The notes beneath the pieces are model-generated. The model had not been told where the DNA came from and did not search any database. It worked only from the letters and a program-made list of their open reading frames with translations. The position numbers were made by a program, and so were the translations under genes. DNA of 64,000 nucleotides from contig OZ176053.1 in the NCBI GenBank assembly GCA_964247055.1, positions 6,014,001-6,078,000 on the forward strand, in the 5' to 3' direction. This DNA comes from Paragordius varius. Taxonomy: Eukaryota; Animalia; Nematomorpha. This document shows, piece after piece, positions 22,829 through 51,000 of this stretch. Positions within the stretch are counted from its first letter, which is position 1. Every line of letters starts with the position of its first letter.

Positions 22829-24166
22829 ATGAATTTTTCCTTAGAAACATGTATAGACTACCACCCTAAACATTTCCCTTTATCACGCCATGATACGGAG
22901 GAAAGGATTGAATTTGTATATTATATCATCTTAACTCCTCTTCAAGTGTTTACAGGGCTAATTGGTAATTGGTTAGCTGTTCAAAGTACATACCATATTT
23001 GTGATAGCATTACAAAACACTATCTAAGGCAGGTAGCATACTTTAACTTGGTATCTTGTTTTATGGACCTATTTTATCCAGTAACCGATAAGCTTGTTGT
23101 TCTTGCTGGACCAAAATCTCTACTTCAAAAGTGTCCTTGGGTCATTTTTATGCGAAAAATTATTATACCGTTATCTAAAATGGTTAAGCGAGCCTCTATT
23201 TTAGTTATGATGGCCTTTTTCATGGATCGATTCTGTATCATATGTCATCCGATACATACTAAGTGTTGGAGACAATTACATTTTCATCGACATATTGGAT
23301 CTTTAACTCTACTTTTAGCTTTTGCGTTATGTTTTCCCATCATACAGTGGTATAAAGTAACGCCATGTCAAAGTGACGGTCAATATAGGAATATTTCTAT
23401 GATTTGGCAAAATCACGGTTTTAGCACTTTAAAAATGTACCTACTTTCTGCATGTAATCGTAGAATCAATTTGAAATCCCAGCATTTTAAACGTTATGAA
23501 GTGGCTAGAGAAACATTGTTAATATTTTTACCGATAGCACTTATGACATATTTTGCTATTCGTATTAAATTATCTGTTCATAGCTTTCACAATCGTAAAA
23601 AACAGCGTCAAATTATATGCTCAACTACGCAAACATGTATAAATCACCTTTCCACCAAAACTAAAATGGAAAAGATTGCATCGGTAAGTGCTACAATACT
23701 ACTCAAGACTAACCATATATTTTTATCCTTTATGAATAGAAATATAAATAATCTTGGACAGTCGAATCAAATTAGTGATATCTCTGTTTTTTCTATTAAA
23801 ACTAATCAACCTATTACAATTTTCGCAGCTGTAAGAAACAATAAAGCAAAACCAGAATCTAATAACTGTGTGGCGGTAAAACATTTACGGAAAACTATGG
23901 CTGTCCTTTTTGGATTCCTGCTATTTTACTCTTTCACAATCCTTCCTGCTTCCATATTCTCCATCATATATTCCTATCATGATTATAAAAATTTGCGTTA
24001 TGCCGTATTGATAATAATTAGCAATTTTTTGGAATACGCTAATTACTCTTGGTGCTTTTACATCTATGCTTTTTTAGATCACATTTTTGGTGCCGTGTTT
24101 TATTCAAAGTTTGTTGTCATATTCTATCGTATCAAACGATTTGCTGAAACAGTAAAACATCATTAG
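22829..24166 (+). CDS. Intronless class A GPCR, FMRFamide/peptide-receptor-like, 445 aa
   Basis: Seven hydrophobic segments; TM1 GLIGN, TM3 MDRF, TM6 TILP, TM7 LEYANYSWCFYIY; long third intracellular loop. Confidence 0.85.
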   Translation: MNFSLETCIDYHPKHFPLSRHDTEERIEFVYYIILTPLQVFTGLIGNWLAVQSTYHICDSITKHYLRQVAYFNLVSCFMDLFYPVTDKLVVLAGPKSLLQKCPWVIFMRKIIIPLSKMVKRASILVMMAFFMDRFCIICHPIHTKCWRQLHFHRHIGSLTLLLAFALCFPIIQWYKVTPCQSDGQYRNISMIWQNHGFSTLKMYLLSACNRRINLKSQHFKRYEVARETLLIFLPIALMTYFAIRIKLSVHSFHNRKKQRQIICSTTQTCINHLSTKTKMEKIASVSATILLKTNHIFLSFMNRNINNLGQSNQISDISVFSIKTNQPITIFAAVRNNKAKPESNNCVAVKHLRKTMAVLFGFLLFYSFTILPASIFSIIYSYHDYKNLRYAVLIIISNFLEYANYSWCFYIYAFLDHIFGAVFYSKFVVIFYRIKRFAETVKHH

Positions 24167-26101: not shown

Positions 26102-29100
26102 TTAATTGATTATGCCATTATTGTCTTCCTCTGGTGCGATATGCTTAAAATGATTAATGCCAGCTTCATTTAACACACATAAATGCTACGTGTAACAAAA
26201 AAATAAAATCACAAAATATAATATATTTACTGTGAATTCCCCATTGATGAAAAAAATATGGCTAATATCTGATCATGACGCCTTTTCAAAACATTTGTCT
26301 TAGAGTGAGATATATATTAAAAAATTTAAAAAAATGATTTTTTAATTTTATTGCTTTTAGTCCATTATAAAACATCATTATTTATACCCATAAAAAATAC
26401 AGTACGTTTATAAGGTAAAAACATAAAATATAGGATTATATTGGATAAATAAGAGAAGTGCATGGTAATTAAAAGTATTAAAAACTTAGGCCGATCATAA
26501 TATCAGTTTTATTAAACTCTTAAATTATTATGATTAAAATTTAGAAAGATATATAAATATATGAAGTCTTACATTTAAATCCCTAAAGTATTGGTTATAA
26601 TCAAGTCCGTATCCCACCACAAATTTGTCAGGAATGCTGAATCCTACAACTAAATTAAATTTTTTTATATATTTTAATAAAATATTAATTAGAGCTACAT
26701 AAATTAATATTTAATTATATTAATTGCTAATGAGAAAATAAAAATCCTTACATGAGGGATCAATATTGATAAAATTTACAATAAATTGTAATGATAGATA
26801 TACAACTTACAATCAACATCATGGCTTTGCAGAGTGTTTGGATTGCGTTTGTGGAACAGGCTGAATATATCAAGGAAATATAAAATAAATTTATAATTAA
26901 GAATAAACCTTGCAACTCTCAAACTTTTAGGTTCGAACGCTCTAAAAGCCTCTAATACCTTGGTTAAAGTTTGTCCAGAATCCACAATGTCTTCAACTAT
27001 GAGAATGTGCTGCAAAAAATAAATTTTAATAGTAACAATTTTCGGCTTATTTTCAGAAGGATTATATGATACGATAATATAATATATTATATTCATTGTA
27101 ATTTATTTGGATAAATTCACAAGTAAATTACATAGACTAGGGATTTAAATATTTGTAATGATAGTGCCCAAGTATCCAAATTTATATTTATATTATAAAA
27201 AATGCTCTTAACAACTCTTAATGAATATAGCTAATCCATTCATAATTTATATGTTAAAAATATTCTAGTTTTGGGCCAAATTTAAATTGGCATTATTCCC
27301 ACAAAATATTTTAAAAAATGGAAATTGTTAAAAAATCATCATCTCAAACTTTTTGCTGCTAAAAATTTATATAAATACTTTACTAATAGTAACAAACATA
27401 TAAACCTTAAAATTAATTAGCCTTAATGGCATTTGGTTACATTTTTACAGCTATTTTTCGGTAAACATTACAGTATGCATTTTAATGGTTGCTTATTTCA
27501 CACTATAGTAGAGCAATTTGAAACACAGGAGGGTATGGAAAAAAAGGGAAAATTGTTTTTTCCACATTTTGTTTTTTCCATTACACTATTGTGTTGCAAA
27601 TTGCCCAGCTTATGTGTGAAATAAGCAACCATCAAAATGCATACTCTAATTTTAAAAATGAGGTGTGCGTGATTGGATATAAAATATTTCCAATTTAATA
27701 AAGTTACAAAATTGATAATAATCAGTTTTATGAACGGAATATAAATATGTTTGATAATTATGAGCCAAATTTAACTAATATATTATGCGAATTTCAGCCT
27801 CGGGAAAAAAAACACCCCAAAATGTCATCTCCATAAAAGTAATCGTGTTAACAGAGACACAAATTTATTTTAAAACTAAAGCTTTAGCAACCTTAAAAAA
27901 CTCCCTAATGGTAATTAACAAGATTTTTGAAGCATAGCTATCTTGCAGCCGTTTTAGGACGAAGATGGCGTCTGGAACGGAAGGAAAATTGTGAAGATGA
28001 TATTGTTACCTGATTTCTTATTTTATTTTCTTATACAACTTATATCATATTTTTCTTGATTTGGAGAAGGCTTTTAGCAAAGTACCCCGAGCGATTCCAT
28101 TGGCCTTAAAATAGCGTTAATGAACAATTAATTCAAGTTATGAAACTCTATCAAAATCCCAAACCATTTTTCAGAACCCATTTGGGAGATTCCAATTCCT
28201 TTAAAATTAAAGTAGGACTCCATCAGGGATCAGCCTTAAGCCCCTTGATGATTATTACAATATTAGATGCTGTTACACGCGATATTTGGTTAAATCTGCC
28301 ATACGAAATTTTATATGCAGATGATATAGTGCTTACCACAACCTCGATTTCAAACATAGAAAAATGTTTATACAATGGCAATAACAGCTAAACAAATTTG
28401 GATTCAAAATAAATGAAAATAAAAGTAAAATTCTAATATCGGGCGAACCCCACAATGATATTAAATACCCATGCGGAGTTTGCGGATTAAATGTTGGATT
28501 TGATTCTATTCTCTGCTTTAAAAATGGTGTCGCAAAAAATCTTAAAACATTACCGGCAAACTCTCCGAAAAGTTAAATTTCAAATGTGAGTCATGCTTGC
28601 ATCATTCAACGGCCCTACCAATTAAGCACGCCCTTGATAATTCAAGCTTAGAAGTTGTATACAAGTTTACCTATCTTGGTAACAAAATAACATCAGACTC
28701 CTCAGACAATAGCGCAATTAATGCCAGAATAAATCGTACCTGGGGAAAAGATCATGAGCTAAAATACATACTAAAACAAAAGCACATATCAAAACTAAAA
28801 TTATAAAATGGTTAAAAGATCAGTTTTGACAAACCTTGGCATTAACACAACAAGAGAAACGTCTCATCAGCGCGGAAAATCACATACTCCGCCTGATGTC
28901 AACGCAGCTAAATCTCCAAGATCTCCGCAATCACATACAAATGGAGTCCAAATTTATCTAATTCAAAAGATTGAGATACTACGGTCCTTGACTATATGAA
29001 TCCTAATAATCCGAACAGAACCTCATTCGACATCATCCCACCTGGAAACAATAAGCTTGGTTGTTCTCGCTTAACTTGGGCTAAGAAGAATCTGGGTTTC

Positions 29101-29685
29101 CAGCAACTCAAACTGCTAATAACATATTTATTGATAAAGAACTATTTAATAAAAATCTGGATAGTTGATGGGGCACAATCAAAACTTTTTAAACAACATT
29201 TGTTTGGATAATTTATATTAATAATATATTATACTTTATTATGAAAATGCTCTTGATTATCCAATCCTATTAATCGCACATATCCTGTACTTTCAGTATC
29301 CTATATTTAATCAATAACAAACTTGGTACGAAATAGCACGAACAAACTCCATAGTTATCGGATAACATCTATCATGCGATATACTGTAATTGTGGAATGT
29401 AAGTAATAATTGATTAAAAAATTTGAAAGATCCCTTGAGTATACAAACAGGGATAAAGGGTGTGTTATCATAGGTTTTTATTATATCATATGCAATTTTT
29501 TCAATCCTAATATAAGAAACTTTCTAACCGGTCATTGATACATCCTTGTGGAATCAGAATATAATCCAAAAACTTCTCATAGTATTTAGGGAACGTAAAG
29601 TGGTCAAGCTGATATTTAATTTCAAAATCCGCTACCTATTTTTTATTCAAAAAAATACGATAACGCAGTCTGTTTTCTTAGGCAT
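26102..29685 (-). CDS. HPRT1: Hypoxanthine-guanine phosphoribosyltransferase, 231 aa, 8 exons
   Basis: Exons (-): 29685-29659, 29635-29529, 29506-29323, 29300-29235, 27009-26909, 26860-26811, 26649-26573, 26185-26102 (696 nt). Motifs CILKG, SY loop, [10 protein letters not shown] and [16 protein letters not shown]. Coding sizes 27/107/184/66 equal human exons 1-4 as I recall them. Confidence 0.96.
27990..29110 (+). mobile_element. RTE-clade LINE remnant in HPRT intron 4 (antisense to the gene)
   Basis: [18 protein letters not shown] and YADDIVL RT motifs, followed by [10 protein letters not shown]; broken frames. Confidence 0.85.
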
Positions 29686-29729: not shown

Positions 29730-32515
29730 ATAAAACTAATACCTGGTGCAGGTGAGGACGATTTGCGCAAATAACTCCCTCCAGCTTCTTTGTCAGGAAA
29801 CCCGTTGCGCCTTCAATGGTCGCCAAAAATTTGGCCAACGCTTCACCCTCTTCAGCAGCAAAGCAGATGGTATGTCTGGAGGTGTTGGATTCTTGGTAAG
29901 GCGCAATATTCTGAGGCGGGTTACTAACTTTATGCCGCATTCACATAGATTGGCCGGACTTCACATAAAAATCAGCACTAAATGTTATACGCTTATTAGC
30001 GCCTACGGCCCTCATGATATATCAGAATACCTGAATTTTTGAATGATCTAGGAACCATTCTGGATTCGGTTCCGGCACGGAATCGCCTTCTGATTTTTGG
30101 TGATATGAACTGCAGGGTGGGAAGAAACATATCTTTGTGGGCTATTGGAAGACACACTCTTACCACTTCCACCAAGGCAGGTAGACTTCTCGCAACCTTT
30201 TGTGATAATCGTCGTCTATTGATTAATAACACCTTTTTCCCAGATAGCCAACATGGTCCGTACACAAGAATTGCAAGGAATGTGTGCACTTCCCAAATTG
30301 ATTTTGTCATTATACGCGAGAAAGATCTGTCAATGGTGAAGAAAGTTGGCTGCGCGATATACAACGACCTTATCAGCGATCACCTTTTGATCTGCGCTGA
30401 GTTACAGTTGACCTGGGCCGCGCGCCCCTCCATAGGTCCGAAATCGGAGTGGGCCACTGTGCTTGGTGAGCTCTCTTCCAGAACCAGGCGAAGACATGTT
30501 GTCTACGAGGACTGGCTATCTGCTGGGACTAAACGATTTCTCCATGCAATACGAATAAATGTTACACGAGTCGTCGCAGAGCATGGATTAGAGCCAATGC
30601 ATATCGCTTGAAACGCAAGGACAGGCAGGCGTTTGTTTCCCGATATTTCAGCAAACTGGCGGCTAATGAGAAACACTCAAGGGAGCACTATTCAATGATT
30701 CGTTTCCTGCTTCGACGCCCCAGAACCTGTATTAGTCTGCATTCTCATGGCAGGCTGATAATGGATAGCCAGAAAAATGTGATCTCTTTGCACCGACATT
30801 ACACTGATCTGTTGGGGAATAATAAAATGATCCAGGATGACGTTGTCAATGATCATCCGTTCTCATTGAAATTGGATGAAGGAACATTTCGCCTAGGTAG
30901 TGAATTTTTACGAAATTATAAGTGCCCAGGGCCAGACCGCAGCGCGGCAGATGCCTGGAAGAAGGAAATACATTGGTGCACTGACAACATCTTACCTATC
31001 ATCAATAGTTGGCTAGAACGTGGCACACTGATGAGGAATGGGTGGAATGCGAGATAATTAATATCGGAAAACAAGATAATCCAGGCACCCCTAATGATTA
31101 CAGGGGTATAGCCCTGGAATTACAGTGTACAAGGTTTTGGCCAACATTGCCCTGTCTAGACTGCAGTCCTTTGATGATGAACTCCATCCAATCTGCGGTT
31201 TTAGGCGGGGAAGGGGAACGATGGATTTATTCTGTTCTTTGGTAATTTTCATCGAGAAAAGCAGGCGACATAAGCACCCGCTCTACTTGGGATTTGTGGA
31301 TATAGCCAAGGCATTCGATAAACTGGATAGGAAGCATGTCATGCGCTTGCTGAAGAGGGTTGATATGGAGGAAAACTTCAAGAACTTTATACCTCACTTG
31401 ATAGTCCGTACGCGTAGTCAGGTGGCAGTTGAAACCACCCGTTCGGCTTACATCTATTCAGAATGAAACCTGAAGCAAGGATGCCCTCTGTCCCCAAAAC
31501 TCTTTAACTTAGCTATGGACTCAATAGTACGGAAGGTATACGCGAGCTTTCCCAATGTCTTTTTCCAGGTGCTCTGCTATGCAGACGACCTTTGCATCTT
31601 AACGGATACGGAGCAGAACCTAGGGCAGGCCCTAGATCAGCTGGAATCTGAATTGACGCCTATATTGGCCTAAATAAAAATTACGAAAAGTCAAAAGTGA
31701 TGATAATAGGTGGGTCTGATGCGAGGATGTTCAAAACTGTTGGAGGGGAGCTGGAAGTTGTGGAGTCCTTTCGATACCTGGGAGTTATGGTGGACAAAAA
31801 CGGATGCGCTCTTAACTCACCTCTACTCAGACTTCATTCCGCAAAGCTTATCTTCGACGGATTACATTGTTAGTGGCGCTCGAAAGAGGTTGGTCAAAGG
31901 CTGAAGTTGAAAATATTTAAAAGTCTAATCCTCCCTGGAATTCTATATGGTTTGTCGGTGTGGCCAAATTCTGTCAAACATACACGCAAGGCTCAGGTAT
32001 TTGTAAATAAATCGCTAAGAGTCATCACAGGCGACATTTACTCCAGGAAAACGGTGCCAACTAGCCACTTATAAGCTTCATCTAAAAACCGATACCTTGC
32101 CTTTAGTGCTGGGAATACCATTGTCAAGTCTGAATGTGGTAGTCCACCAGCTACGCCATAACGAAATGAGTCCGCTTAAGGCGGCACTGGAATGGAAACT
32201 GAATGGCCGCCCTATTGGAAGTATAAAAAAATGGCTGGACGCATGTGTGTTTTCTTGCAGCGTGTGGGCCTTGCGGAGTCAGACTTTGTAACACTAGTGC
32301 TGAACGGAGGTTGGAAGGATAAAGTGCCCAGATTAAGAGAGCGTTGTTAAAGGAAGAGGAGAGGATACACTACGCCAAACGGCAACGTCGACGCGAGCGC
32401 CGGCTTCAAAAACTACCTGCGAAAAGGGCTAATCCGGTGGGGGACAGTCTGTGGTTGTCTGTGACCTTAAATACTTTATTAGGGGGTAAATTACATATTT
32501 AATATTACTATTATT
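29730..32515 (+). mobile_element. Near-complete LINE ORF2 (APE endonuclease + RT), RTE-like, frameshifted
   Basis: APE motifs QETR, GVGF, SAYGP, GDMN, IDF, SDH; RT motifs PGPD, YRGIAL, GFRRGR, FVDIAKAFD, QGCPLSP, YADDL; ATT-rich 3' end near 32505-32517. Confidence 0.92.
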
Positions 32516-48083: not shown

Positions 48084-51000
48084 ATGACCGCATTGAATAG
48101 ACTTAAAGCGACAGGTCCCCTTTCAAAAAATGAAGAAAAAATTCCGGGATCATATAAAATTGAAAAAACTATAGGAAAAGGAAACTATGCCGTAGTAAAA
48201 CTCGCTAGTCACATATTTACTGGCCAAAAGGTGGCTATCAAGGTGATTGACAAAACTAAACTTGACCTTATGAACAAAATTCAATTGTTTCAAGAAGTTA
48301 ATTGTATGAAACTTGTCAGACATCCTAATGTAGTTAAGCTATATGAAGTCATTGATACCCCGACAAAATTGTATTTAATCCTTGAACTTGGTGAGGGTGG
48401 GGATTTATATGATTATATCCTTAAACACGATCGCGGTATTGAAGAGAATAAAGCCAAAGTTTATTTCCGGCAAATCTTAAACGCTATAATATATTGCCAC
48501 AAAATGCACGTCGTTCATAGAGATTTGAAGCCAGAAAATGTCATATTTTTTGATAATTACGCCAATGTCAAACTTACCGATTTTGGATTTAGCAACAAAT
48601 TTAAGCCTGGTCAAAAATTGGAAACATCTTGCGGCTCCCTAGCATATTCAGCTCCGGAAATTTTATTAGGCGATCAATATGACGCCCAAGCTATCGGTAT
48701 TTTTTTCAGTTTATATGTTATGATGATACTTGTTAAAAATGTCTTAACACAGACTAATATTAATTCTTCAATTTTACATTAATATTAAACCATTTTTTGG
48801 ATATTTAATGTAAAACAAAAAAGTTCTAAGTAAATAACACAATCACAGTAAGACTTTGGACAAACAATTTTGTATATATCGACCTTAAAATCAATATTTT
48901 TTAACGAATTAAGTTAACGAACATAACGCTTCATACATCAAATTAAATTTTAAAAAATATATACATGTTTATATATCGTAACATTTTAGAATTTTATAGA
49001 TTCAATTATCGATTTTAATGACATTTTTATAGTAATAGTGTGCATTATTTTGCACACTTAATTACTTAGTGTAAAGATATCGTCTTATCAATAATTATAT
49101 ATTTATATTTTTTGTTATTAATTACTTTTGATTTTATGCTAGCAAGGATTGAAAAATTAAGAGGAATTTTTTTGAACGATACAAACTTAAATTAACAATT
49201 AATCCCATCAAATTATATTTTTGTGCATAATATCACATTCAAACAAATTATTGAATATTATTTTTAAAGTAATTTTCATAGCAACTCTTATAACATCAGT
49301 TTAAACGCTTGGCAACATTTATTTTCATATGCCTAAAATAATATAAACGGAATGACTTTTCGTGACCGCATCTTTTATCATTCTTTAAACATAAGTTATT
49401 CATATGATATAAAATTTTAAAATTTATAGAAAATACAATTTTGTGTAGTTTGAAATTTACCTCCGATTTTTTACCATTAATTGTTATATTGGACTATAAA
49501 AGGTAATTTATATGGTTTATTAATGTTATGATTAAGATATGACATATTTTTTATAGTATATATTATCCGTTGACCGTGAACTGCATCAACAAGCGGTCAA
49601 AAATTTATTTTTTCCACCAAAAAATAATTTTGATTGTCACATAAATGCTCAGAGTTAATATTAATTTCTTTGTACTTATATACAATATAAAATTGTTTAT
49701 ATTCATAGATACAATACAATATTAAAAATTATAATTTATGAATAAATTAAATTAACAACATCTTTAAAAGAATATGTATTCATAATATTTTATTTCATTA
49801 TTTATGATTCAAATAGATATTTGGAGCTTAGGGGTTCTTCTTTACATGTTGGTGGTTGGAAAATGCCCGTTTCTAGAAAATAATGATAATGAAACAATCA
49901 CAATGATAATTGATTGCAAGTATACTATGCCGGAAAATCTTTCACCTGAATGCAAAGAGTACAATTTTTGAAACATAATTTTGTATAAAAAAATGTAAAA
50001 ATGTAAATTTACATTATACAACTTAAAATACTTTGGTCTAAAACAACATTCATTAGTATCTTAACCATTACATGTTTTTTTTGTAATATTTACTTAGAAA
50101 TTATATATTGCATAATAAATTTCCAAGATGCGTTTTAATCATTTTCGGTCGATTATTAATCTAGTCATATTGGAGCCGCCATATATACAGTCATGTATCC
50201 TTTATTTTATCAAAAATTTATTTTTTTTCGTTAAATGGGTATAAATATTTGGTAAAGAATGGAAAAAGCAAGAGCTCAATGGTAATAACAATATCATATT
50301 CACCAAGAAAGTATATGAATTACCATAGAGCTTTTGTTTTTTCCATTTTTTACCAAATATTTATACCCATTTAACGAAAAAAACAAATTTTTGATAAAAT
50401 AAAGGCATGACTGTAAGTTTTTTAGTCTAAAATCATTTTCAACATCAATTAACCTTGAAGTATGTGGTTAATATTTTTTACATTTTATCTATGATCCATA
50501 GTTTGATTAGCAAAATGCTGGTCAAGGATCCAGCTAAAAGAGCTCATCTTGATGAAATTTTGCGACACCCTTGGTTAAGGTTAAACAATACGCAAGGCCT
50601 TAATACCGCTTCTGCTGATAAAAACCAAGTTGTTGATGGTAAGATTACATCTCTCCTCACCCCTTTGAATCCAAACACTGAATTTTATTCGACTGGATTT
50701 TCCCGATCTGATATAACGGAGGACGTTCACAAAGCCGTCATTAATAAAATGGTGAATGCACAGATTGCCACCGAGCATCAAATCAAACAGTAAGTAATTA
50801 TTGATTTTTGCATTAAAAGTTATATTTTTGGGTTTGTAGAATTTAAAACTTTCTTTGCCCATTACCGCCTATATTTAAATAAAGTCTCACATATTTAAAT
50901 TTTGTGAATACATTGTATAAATTATTTAATTTATTTGATTTTTTATTTAAAAATTATCCATCAAATCTGTTTTACCGCTCGAACAAACATTTGTATTTGC

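What the first reader, a model, noticed from the sequence alone, without database searches (positions are those of the whole stretch)
29301..29658. HPRT introns 1-3 reduced to 23, 22 and 22 nt at ancestral positions
Seen: coding exons of 27, 107, 184 and 66 nt separated by GTATTTTTTTGAATAAAAAATAG, GTTAGAAAGTTTCTTATATTAG and GTTTGTTATTGATTAAATATAG. Recalled: these exon sizes equal human HPRT1 exons 1-4, where the introns are kb-sized. This is the cleanest proof in the window that the micro-introns are ancient introns shrunk in place, not new insertions or assembly errors.
Basis: partly seen in the sequence, partly recalled or inferred. Interest (0 to 1): 0.8.

Follow-up and report, generated by a model that had tools for sequence, protein, structure and literature searches.

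The report
Three 22-23-base introns in HPRT
The purine-salvage gene HPRT of this AT-rich animal genome starts with three introns only 22-23 bases long that sit exactly where humans and other eukaryotes have ordinary introns, a clean but unsurprising example of the tiny-intron class already noted many times in this genome.

Summary
On the minus strand, coding exons of 27, 107, 184 and 66 nt are separated by GT-AG segments of 23, 22 and 22 nt. Each segment carries an in-frame stop.

The gene continues for 3.6 kb in all:
- Intron 4 is 2,225 nt and mostly repeats.
- Human exons 5 and 6 are fused (101 nt).
- The later introns are 48, 161 and 387 nt.
- The predicted product is 231 aa with the HPRT catalytic motifs, and the gene is single-copy.

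All seven introns lie at the site and phase of human introns 1-4 and 6-8. Four other eukaryotic loci share these borders, with exons of 107, 184 and 66 nt and introns of 50-227 nt. "Ancient introns shrunk in place" is therefore well supported.

Independent DNA contigs carry the micro-introns. A second haplotype has a 24-nt intron 1.

Limits:
- No RNA covers the locus, so splicing is inferred.
- Intron 1 has a 29-nt alternative.
- I could not verify which organism this is; earlier notes say a horsehair-worm relative.

Animal introns under 30 nt at conserved positions are published for dicyemids and myxobolid myxozoans. This scan has already reported the same class many times elsewhere in this genome.

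The parts
29659..29685 (-). HPRT exon 1, coding part (27 nt, ATG at 29685-29683, 9 codons)
   Evidence: An in-frame stop lies 12 codons upstream. Exon 2 has no in-frame Met, so an upstream start exon is needed.
29636..29658 (-). Micro-intron 1: 23 nt, GT..AG, phase 0, 13% GC
   Evidence: It has the same site as human intron 1 and as L008 and L011. Retention gives a stop after 3 codons. A second haplotype is 24 nt. An alternative donor 6 nt upstream would give 29 nt.
29529..29635 (-). HPRT exon 2 (107 nt)
   Evidence: Human exon 2 is 107 bp. L008 and L011 also have 107 nt.
29507..29528 (-). Micro-intron 2: 22 nt, GT..AG, phase 2, inside the Arg codon CG|G
   Evidence: The same split Arg codon is found in human and in L008, L009, L010 and L011. 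Its own terminal TAG is in frame if it is retained.
29323..29506 (-). HPRT exon 3 (184 nt)
   Evidence: gapless match to human residues 46/47-105. PF00156. Human exon 3 is 184 bp. L009 has 184 nt and L008 has 187 nt.
29301..29322 (-). Micro-intron 3: 22 nt, GT..AG, phase 0
   Evidence: It has the same site as human intron 3 and as L008 and L009. It is absent in L010, L011 and L012. Retention gives a stop after 4 codons.
29235..29300 (-). HPRT exon 4 (66 nt)
   Evidence: Human exon 4 is 66 bp. L009 also has 66 nt.
27010..29234 (-). Intron 4: 2,225 nt, GT..AG, phase 0, mostly repeats
   Evidence: It holds a palindromic MITE-like element at about 27465-27655 (at least 1,220 candidate copies) and a roughly 550-bp dispersed repeat at 28651-29198 (at least 59 candidates). 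Read depth is raised over about 78% of its length. It has the same site as human intron 4 and as L009, L010 and L011.
26909..27009 (-). HPRT exon 5+6, fused (101 nt = 18+83), with the PRPP-binding motif
   Evidence: (PF00156, 37.4 bits, above the cut-off). No intron lies at the human intron 5 site.
26861..26908 (-). Intron 6: 48 nt, phase 2
   Evidence: The same split Ser codon is found in human, and L008 has the same border.
26811..26860 (-). HPRT exon 7 (50 nt; human 47, one codon more)
26650..26810 (-). Intron 7: 161 nt, phase 1, inside the Phe codon before V-G-F
26573..26649 (-). HPRT exon 8 (77 nt); 23 of 25 residues identical to human
   Evidence: E = 1.3e-10, human residues 179-203..
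26186..26572 (-). Intron 8: 387 nt, phase 0
26102..26185 (-). HPRT exon 9 (84 nt including TAA)
   Evidence: The match to the C-terminus of P0133 is weak (E = 0.05).

Best explanation
This is the single, intact HPRT (hypoxanthine-guanine phosphoribosyltransferase) gene of an AT-rich, repeat-rich animal genome. It has eight coding exons and seven GT-AG introns. All seven introns were inherited from the ancestral eukaryotic/animal HPRT gene structure.

The three introns nearest the start codon have been whittled down to 22-23 nt, close to the smallest size a spliceosome is known to handle. The four later introns stayed ordinary (48-387 nt) or were inflated by transposon insertions (2,225 nt). 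The intron corresponding to human intron 5 has been lost.

I infer that the micro-introns are removed from the pre-mRNA by normal U2-type splicing. Each carries an in-frame stop, so any unspliced transcript would be non-productive.

Shown here: the anatomy, the homology of the sites, presence in independent DNA contigs, and a length polymorphism. Inferred: the splicing itself, how the introns are recognised, and the direction of the size change.
For: - The exon and intron map has continuous frames and canonical ends.
- Exon-by-exon alignments to the 218-residue human chain are gapless, which places all seven introns at human intron sites and phases. Human exon sizes come from PMC2826410.
- The same borders were read directly in other eukaryotic loci:
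  - L008: exon 2 is 107 nt, intron 2 is 168 nt, exon 3 is 187 nt, intron 3 is 164 nt.
  - L009: exon 3 is 184 nt, intron 3 is 134 nt, exon 4 is 66 nt.
  - L010: intron 2 is 50 nt, intron 4 is 55 nt.
  - L011: exon 2 is 107 nt, intron 2 is 227 nt.
- The family assignment rests on PF00156, exon-wise TIGR01203 hits and PDB HPRT matches. The PRPP motif, the catalytic Asp, and the Lys, Phe, Asp and Arg of the purine site are all present.
- The gene is single-copy in the 110.6-Mb assembly.
- DNA contigs of run X1 match 29214-29575 exactly, and no joint skips a micro-intron.
- An allele at about half depth has a base change and a 1-nt insertion inside intron 1, making it 24 nt. A frameshifting change like that is tolerated only in non-coding sequence.
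- For introns 2 and 3, every other GT-AG pair that keeps the frame deletes or replaces conserved residues.
Against: - There is no RNA evidence. The three runs labelled RNA(?) for the same species laid nothing on the locus, so neither expression nor splicing has been observed.
- Intron 1 has a frame-preserving alternative donor, giving a 29-nt intron. The N-terminus is too poorly conserved to decide between them.
- The comparator loci come from unidentified organisms: three metagenome or metagenome-like contigs and one NCBI assembly that I can name only from memory.
- I found no close relative's HPRT. The best exon 3 hit in 1.84 billion representatives is 50% identical. The timing of the shrinkage is therefore unknown.
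Confidence: 0.88

Rival explanations
1. Intron 1 is 29 nt, not 23 nt. The donor would be the GT 6 nt upstream (window 29664), so exon 1 would code 7 residues rather than 9. In that case the match to the human 27-nt exon is a near-miss.
For:: this pair is also GT-AG, keeps the frame and has no stop. The N-terminal 9 residues are not conserved, so homology cannot discriminate.
Against: The 23-nt version gives exactly 9 + 36 residues up to the split Arg codon, as in human. In L008 and L011, exon 2 also starts at the homologous Ile/Val and is 107 nt, which fixes the acceptor but not the donor. The 23-nt size fits the 22-nt size of introns 2 and 3.
Confidence: 0.08
2. The gene is a decaying pseudogene, or the segments are never removed. 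On this view the 22-23-nt pieces are small insertions that simply break the frame.
For: No RNA covers the locus. A degraded retrotransposon starts about 57 nt upstream of the ATG, so the promoter context is odd.
Against: Three independent insertions would each need GT..AG ends and would each have to land exactly on an ancestral intron site and phase. The other five exons and four introns are intact, and all catalytic residues are kept. It is the only HPRT copy in the genome.
Confidence: 0.02
3. The micro-introns are recent gains, for example introner-like or repair-mediated insertions at proto-splice sites, that coincide with old intron sites by chance or by site preference.
For: Intron gain at preferred sites is known in some eukaryotes (general knowledge). 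Introns 1 and 3 share a T-T-G-A-W-T-A-A-A stretch at the same offset.
Against: All seven introns of the gene, both long and tiny, sit on human sites. The chance for the three tiny ones alone is about 1e-6. No similar 22-nt element family is needed to explain this. The shared stretch is not kept in the second haplotype of intron 1.
Confidence: 0.015
4. The segments are an assembly or sequencing artefact, or they are removed at the DNA level (like ciliate eliminated sequences) rather than by RNA splicing.
For: The best DNA run may be the very sample used for the assembly, so it is not fully independent.
Against: Short-read-derived contigs match the assembly exactly across introns 2 and 3. A second haplotype also has intron 1. 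No DNA contig joins the exons directly. GT..AG ends and AT-rich content are spliceosomal features.
Confidence: 0.005

Closest known systems
Human HPRT1 gene structure (nine exons; coding lengths 27/107/184/66/18/83/47/77/48)
   Same: Seven of the eight human intron sites, with identical phases. Exons 1-4 and 8 have identical length, and 5+6 together are 101 = 18+83.
   Different: The human introns are kilobases long (general knowledge). Here introns 1-3 are 22-23 nt. Intron 5 is absent, exon 7 is one codon longer, and the C-terminus is 12 residues longer. Protein identity is only about 35-45%, except in exon 8.
Ultra-short introns of myxobolid myxozoans and of Dicyema japonicum (Hadjez et al., Mol Biol Evol 2026, PMC13644364)
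   Same: These are animal GT-AG introns of about 20-27 nt with reduced splice-site motifs and an A-rich stretch before the AG. They sit at conserved positions between conserved exons, which is the same argument the authors make with RPS13.
   Different: In those genomes nearly all introns are tiny (median 22-27 nt) and the genomes are compact. Here only the three start-proximal introns are tiny. Within the same gene they coexist with a 2.2-kb repeat-filled intron, in a 110-Mb repeat-rich genome. The paper's survey of 51 animal genomes found no third lineage.
Small 5' introns of parasitic flatworms, including the Schistosoma mansoni HGPRT gene (recalled from Craig et al. 1989 Nucleic Acids Res and the S. 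mansoni genome paper; neither could be opened here)
   Same: Very small introns near the gene start and larger ones downstream. As I recall, this pattern was first noticed in the very same gene, HGPRT.
   Different: As I recall, the flatworm small introns are about 26-42 nt, longer than the 22-23 nt here. This resemblance is from memory and was not tested (searches found no text).
Short introns of ciliates and the Bigelowiella nucleomorph (15-35 nt)
   Same: Similar absolute size with canonical GT-AG ends.
   Different: They are not animals, their size is uniform genome-wide, and they are not restricted to the 5' end of genes (general knowledge; also cited in PMC13644364).

Membership tests
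HPRT / 6-oxopurine phosphoribosyltransferase (type I PRTase) | Phosphoribosyltransferase domain (Pfam PF00156) | tested here: met
   Exon 5+6 alone scores 37.4 bits (cut-off 26.3). Exon 3 scores 23.8 bits.
HPRT / 6-oxopurine phosphoribosyltransferase (type I PRTase) | Specific HGPRTase model (NCBIfam TIGR01203) above its cut-off | tested here: inconclusive
   Only exon-wise matches were possible: 41.4, 35.3 and 34.9 bits against a cut-off of 150 for a whole protein. The joined protein was not scored.
HPRT / 6-oxopurine phosphoribosyltransferase (type I PRTase) | PRPP-binding loop (hydrophobic run, E-D, then D-T/S-G-x-T) and the catalytic Asp | tested here: met
   The [13 protein letters not shown] stretch aligns to human residues 130-142. 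The human Lys of G-K-T is Gln here.
HPRT / 6-oxopurine phosphoribosyltransferase (type I PRTase) | Purine-site residues (Lys in the K-R motif of exon 7; Phe-Val, Asp and Arg of exon 8) and the L-K-G loop of exon 3 | tested here: met
   All are present.
HPRT / 6-oxopurine phosphoribosyltransferase (type I PRTase) | Enzyme activity on hypoxanthine and guanine | not testable with these tools
   This needs expression and an assay.
Spliceosomal (U2-type GT-AG) intron | GT at the 5' end and AG at the 3' end | tested here: met
   This holds for all seven introns, including the 24-nt allele of intron 1.
Spliceosomal (U2-type GT-AG) intron | Removal restores a frame that is colinear with homologues; retention breaks it | tested here: met
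   Alignments to human HPRT are gapless across each junction. There are in-frame stops in all three micro-introns.
Spliceosomal (U2-type GT-AG) intron | Site and phase shared with introns of other species | tested here: met
   Shared with human and with L008, L009, L010 and L011.
Spliceosomal (U2-type GT-AG) intron | Absent from mature mRNA | not testable with these tools
   No RNA contigs lie on the locus.
Spliceosomal (U2-type GT-AG) intron | Branch-point adenosine at a workable distance | tested here: inconclusive
   A-rich stretches lie 3-12 nt before each AG. A T-T-G-A-W motif is shared by introns 1 and 3, but it is changed in the second haplotype. No lariat data are available.
Animal ultra-short intron class (<30 nt; PMC13644364) | Length below 30 nt in an animal nuclear gene | tested here: met
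   Lengths are 23 (or 24), 22 and 22 nt. Animal origin is supported by a SNRK kinase exon 65-76% identical to bilaterian SNRK. The phylum was not verified.
Animal ultra-short intron class (<30 nt; PMC13644364) | Tiny size is the genome-wide norm (median intron 22-27 nt) | tested here: not met
   Within this one gene, four of the seven introns are 48-2,225 nt. Earlier notes of this scan describe a bimodal, 5'-biased distribution, which I did not re-test genome-wide.

The most novel reading that the evidence does not exclude
Sub-30-nt spliceosomal introns arose a third time in animals, in a lineage with a bulky, transposon-rich genome rather than a compact one (earlier notes say a horsehair-worm relative). 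They are confined to the cap-proximal few hundred bases of genes. That would imply that extreme shortening is driven or permitted by something tied to the 5' end of the transcript (for example cap-assisted recognition, or protection from insertions), not by genome streamlining. HPRT would be a convenient test gene, because it holds three such introns and four ordinary ones.
Probability: 0.5. Interest if true: 0.7.

Novelty: new member of a known kind. Interest (0 to 1): 0.45.

Why it matters
Introns of 22-23 nt are at the lower limit of what a spliceosome is known to process. A September 2026 survey found them in only two animal lineages, both with compact genomes.

This locus shows the same extreme size at provably inherited sites, next to normal and transposon-swollen introns in the same transcript. 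That argues against simple genome streamlining, and it gives a compact natural minigene (exons 1-5) for asking how such introns are recognised.

There is also a practical point. Standard gene finders that set a minimum intron length will break this gene and others like it.

Taken alone, however, the HPRT case adds one more clean example to a class that this scan has already reported many times in this genome. It does not add a new phenomenon.

Tried and rejected
- **RNA support:** The three RNA(?) runs laid nothing.
- **Word search with exon 3:** No candidates. The length filter excludes full-length HPRTs, and the joined protein was deliberately not built.
- **The search for related loci with exon 5+6:** With exon 3 in prokaryote genomes it found nothing.
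- **Organism identity:**
  - The SNRK kinase exon is too conserved to place the genome.
  - Its best hits lie on unnamed metagenome contigs.
  - The 445-aa GPCR ORF found no relatives at all.
  - I therefore could not verify the 'horsehair worm' label in the earlier notes.
- **Window-wide scan for micro-introns:** An open-frame-based scan did not separate signal from a reversed-sequence control, so I dropped it. I also stopped a manual reconstruction of the neighbouring micro-intron-rich gene at 39.9-43.2 kb, which belongs to another finding.
- **Literature:**
  - I could not open the S. mansoni HGPRT small-intron paper or the S. mansoni genome paper.
  - I found no paper giving all human HPRT splice-junction coordinates.
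  - The held library has no paper on hairworm or Gordionus intron sizes.
- **Rfam hits in intron 4:** Hits to plant miRNA families lie far below their gathering scores. They reflect the hairpin of a palindromic repeat.
- **Branch-point reading:** I rejected the T-T-G-A-W motif as a fixed branch point, because the second haplotype changes it.

Full report
**Observation**

The feature is on the minus strand. Read that way, the window shows an ATG at 29685 followed by four coding pieces of 27, 107, 184 and 66 nt.
- Each segment starts with GT and ends with AG.
- Each is much more AT-rich than the exons (13-23% GC against 34%).
- Each puts a stop codon in frame within a few codons if it is read through.
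- An in-frame TAG lies 12 codons upstream of the ATG with no other ATG in between. Exon 2 has no in-frame Met, so a separate start exon is required.

**The whole gene**

A motif scan and reading of the sequence found the rest 2.2 kb further on:
- Intron 4 runs 29234-27010 (2,225 nt).
- A 101-nt exon (27009-26909) corresponds to human exons 5 and 6 without an intron between them.
- Intron 6 is 48 nt.
- Exon 7 is 50 nt, one codon more than human.
- Intron 7 is 161 nt.
- Exon 8 is 77 nt.
- Intron 8 is 387 nt.
- Exon 9 is 84 nt and ends in TAA at 26102.

All seven introns are GT-AG. The frames connect through split codons that encode Arg, Ser and Phe, as in human HPRT. The coding length is 696 nt (231 residues).

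All searches were made exon by exon and by reference. Only short local junctions were joined inside one script, to test alternative splice pairs.

**Identity of the gene**
- Exon 5+6 alone passes the Pfam phosphoribosyltransferase threshold (37.4 bits). Exon 3 scores 23.8 bits.
- The HGPRTase model TIGR01203 hits three exons of this locus and nothing else in the 110.6-Mb assembly, so the gene is single-copy.
- Every exon tested finds HPRT or HGXPRT chains in the PDB. Exon 8 is 23/25 identical to human HPRT.
- The PRPP loop, the catalytic Asp, the Lys of exon 7 and the Phe-Val, Asp and Arg of exon 8 are all present. One difference is Gln in place of the Lys of the human G-K-T.

Nothing suggests a pseudogene.

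**Are the sites ancestral?**

The alignments to the 218-residue human chain are gapless:
- Exon 2, residues 2-35, aligns to human 11-44.
- Exon 3, residues 2-60, aligns to human 47-105.
- Exon 5+6, residues 2-33, aligns to human 130-161.
- Exon 8, residues 1-25, aligns to human 179-203.

I combined this with the human exon lengths of 107, 184, 66 and 83 bp given in PMC2826410 and with my own knowledge of the remaining lengths (27, 18, 47, 77). On that basis all seven introns lie at the site and phase of human introns 1, 2, 3, 4, 6, 7 and 8. Human intron 5 has no counterpart.

To go beyond human I ran the exhaustive representative search with exon 3, because the word search had returned nothing. 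It gave only 21 weak hits, none closer than 50% identity. Several of them are open-frame calls that run from an exon into its flanking introns, and so expose exon borders.

I fetched five contigs and read their borders:
- **L008, a Tara Oceans metagenome scaffold.** Exon 2 is 107 nt, intron 2 is 168 nt (inside the same Arg codon), exon 3 is 187 nt and intron 3 is 164 nt. Exons 4-6 are fused into 167 nt (66+18+83). The borders of introns 1 and 6 are the same as here.
- **L009, a JGI metagenome contig.** Exon 3 is 184 nt, intron 3 is 134 nt and exon 4 is 66 nt, followed by GT.
- **L010, an NCBI assembly contig (GCA_003675995.1).** I recall this as a trombidid mite but could not verify it. Intron 2 is 50 nt and intron 4 is 55 nt at the same sites. 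There is no intron 3.
- **L011, a Logan contig.** Exon 2 is 107 nt and intron 2 is 227 nt. Exons 3+4 are fused. The borders of introns 1 and 4 are the same.
- **L012.** It lacks introns 1-3 and has one intron 7 nt away from the intron 4 site. This is a useful contrast, because it shows the method can detect non-matching sites.

Two further hits (P0136, P0137) are vertebrate-type exon 3 fragments. I took them as possibly human-like and did not fetch or compare their contigs.

The organisms behind L008, L009, L011 and L012 are unknown.

Even so, the recurrence of 107/184/66-nt exons and identical phases in five independent sources makes inheritance the only reasonable reading. In every comparator the homologous introns are 50 nt or longer, so 22-23 nt is the derived extreme.

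**Are the micro-introns real DNA, and are they non-coding?**

Contigs of a public DNA run of the same species label match 29214-29575 without a single difference. That stretch spans introns 3 and 2. No DNA contig joins the exons directly. The run may be the sample the assembly came from, so this excludes a consensus artefact rather than giving fully independent support.

More telling is an allele at about half the depth (600 of 1,258). It carries a base change at 29647 and a one-base insertion after 29648, both inside intron 1. Intron 1 in that allele is 24 nt, with GT..AG and the in-frame TAG preserved. Nearby, the same contig has one synonymous and one non-synonymous change in exon 2. A one-base insertion at that frequency is what one expects in an intron and not in coding sequence.

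**Alternatives at the junctions**

I enumerated all GT-AG pairs that keep the frame open. For introns 2 and 3, every alternative deletes conserved residues or replaces them with intron-derived ones. One example loses the G-x-I-x-D-R motif shared with human. For intron 1 there is one real alternative: a donor 6 nt upstream, which gives a 29-nt intron and a 21-nt coding exon 1. The size match to human, and to introns 2 and 3, favours 23 nt, but only RNA can settle it.

**What could not be shown**

No RNA covers the locus. Splicing is therefore inferred from anatomy and homology. I did not test that.

**Context within the gene**

Intron 4 is mostly repeats.
- A palindromic, MITE-like element of about 190 bp lies at roughly 27465-27655, with at least 1,220 candidate copies in the genome.
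- A dispersed repeat of about 550 bp lies at 28651-29198, ending 36 nt from the exon 4 donor.
- Read depth is raised over about 78% of the intron.
- A degraded non-LTR retrotransposon begins about 57 nt upstream of the ATG on the other strand. Its Pfam matches to endonuclease and reverse transcriptase are weak.

The gene thus shows, in miniature, the pattern that earlier notes describe for this genome: tiny introns within about 320 nt of the start codon, and ordinary or transposon-swollen ones downstream.

**Organism**

I could not verify the 'horsehair-worm relative' label of the earlier notes.
- A SNRK kinase exon in the window is 65-76% identical to SNRK of molluscs, ticks, fishes and Trichoplax. 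That fits a not especially fast-evolving animal, and argues against a myxozoan or a dicyemid.
- Its best hits sit on unnamed metagenome contigs.
- A GPCR ORF found no relatives.

**Comparison with what is known**

Hadjez et al. (Mol Biol Evol, September 2026, PMC13644364) state that introns under about 30 bp were thought absent from animals. They show them in myxobolid myxozoans (median 22-27 bp) and confirm them in Dicyema japonicum. They use conserved intron positions in RPS13 plus Iso-Seq as proof. In a survey of 51 animal genomes they find no further lineage, and they predict that more will turn up.

The HPRT case is the same kind of thing, argued in the same way. It differs in two respects:
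- The tiny introns are a start-proximal minority.
- The genome is large and repeat-rich.

From memory, small 5' introns are also known in schistosomes and were first described in the schistosome HGPRT gene. I could not open those papers. The held library has no paper on intron sizes in hairworms.

**Verdict**

This is a new member of a known kind. It is a tidy, well-controlled example and a good assay gene.

This scan has already reported the same class of micro-introns many times on other DNA of this genome. The HPRT locus alone adds confirmation rather than a new phenomenon. Interest is 0.45.

Noticed in passing
window 27465-27655 (inside HPRT intron 4): A palindromic, MITE-like element of about 190 bp with long inverted arms. 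It has at least 1,220 candidate copies in the genome, and the scored copies are 74-87% identical. Read depth there is about 2,000 times the single-copy level. Its weak Rfam hits to plant miRNA families are hairpin artefacts.
   Followed up: partly
window 28651-29198 (inside HPRT intron 4): A dispersed repeat of about 550 bp, with at least 59 candidate copies on many contigs at 72-84% identity. It ends 36 nt from the exon 4 donor. I assigned no coding domain to it.
   Followed up: partly
window 29742-31900, + strand: A GC-richer (about 45%) degraded non-LTR retrotransposon. Its Pfam matches to endonuclease-RT and RVT_1 are weak, and it has frameshifts. It begins only about 57 nt upstream of the HPRT start codon, so the HPRT promoter must lie in or against it.
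   Followed up: partly
window 29636-29658 and 29588, 29619: A second haplotype in the DNA run has a 24-nt intron 1 (a T>G change at 29647 and a 1-nt insertion). In exon 2 it has one synonymous change and one Ile-to-Asn change.
   Followed up: yes
window 26909-27009: Human exons 5 and 6 are one exon here, so intron 5 has been lost. L008 also lacks introns 4 and 5, and L010 and L011 lack intron 3. Intron loss in HPRT is therefore common, while the surviving sites are stable.
   Followed up: yes
window 48084-48782, + strand: A 232-aa open exon encodes the kinase domain of SNRK (SNF-related kinase). It is 65-76% identical to molluscan, tick, fish and placozoan SNRK, so it is a slowly evolving gene in this genome.
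   Followed up: partly
window 22829-24166, + strand: An intronless 445-aa ORF has a marginal rhodopsin-family 7TM match (30.9 bits). It has no relative at E<=1e-5 in the word-indexed protein search. It may be a lineage-specific GPCR, and it lies 2 kb beyond the HPRT 3' end.
   Followed up: partly
L010:2747-3195 and L010:5490-5902 (NCBI GCA_003675995.1 contig): Two tandem HPRT copies lie on one 5.9-kb contig. The first has a stop inside exon 3. The annotated 153-aa product (P0121) appears to stitch parts of both copies together in the wrong order.
   Followed up: partly
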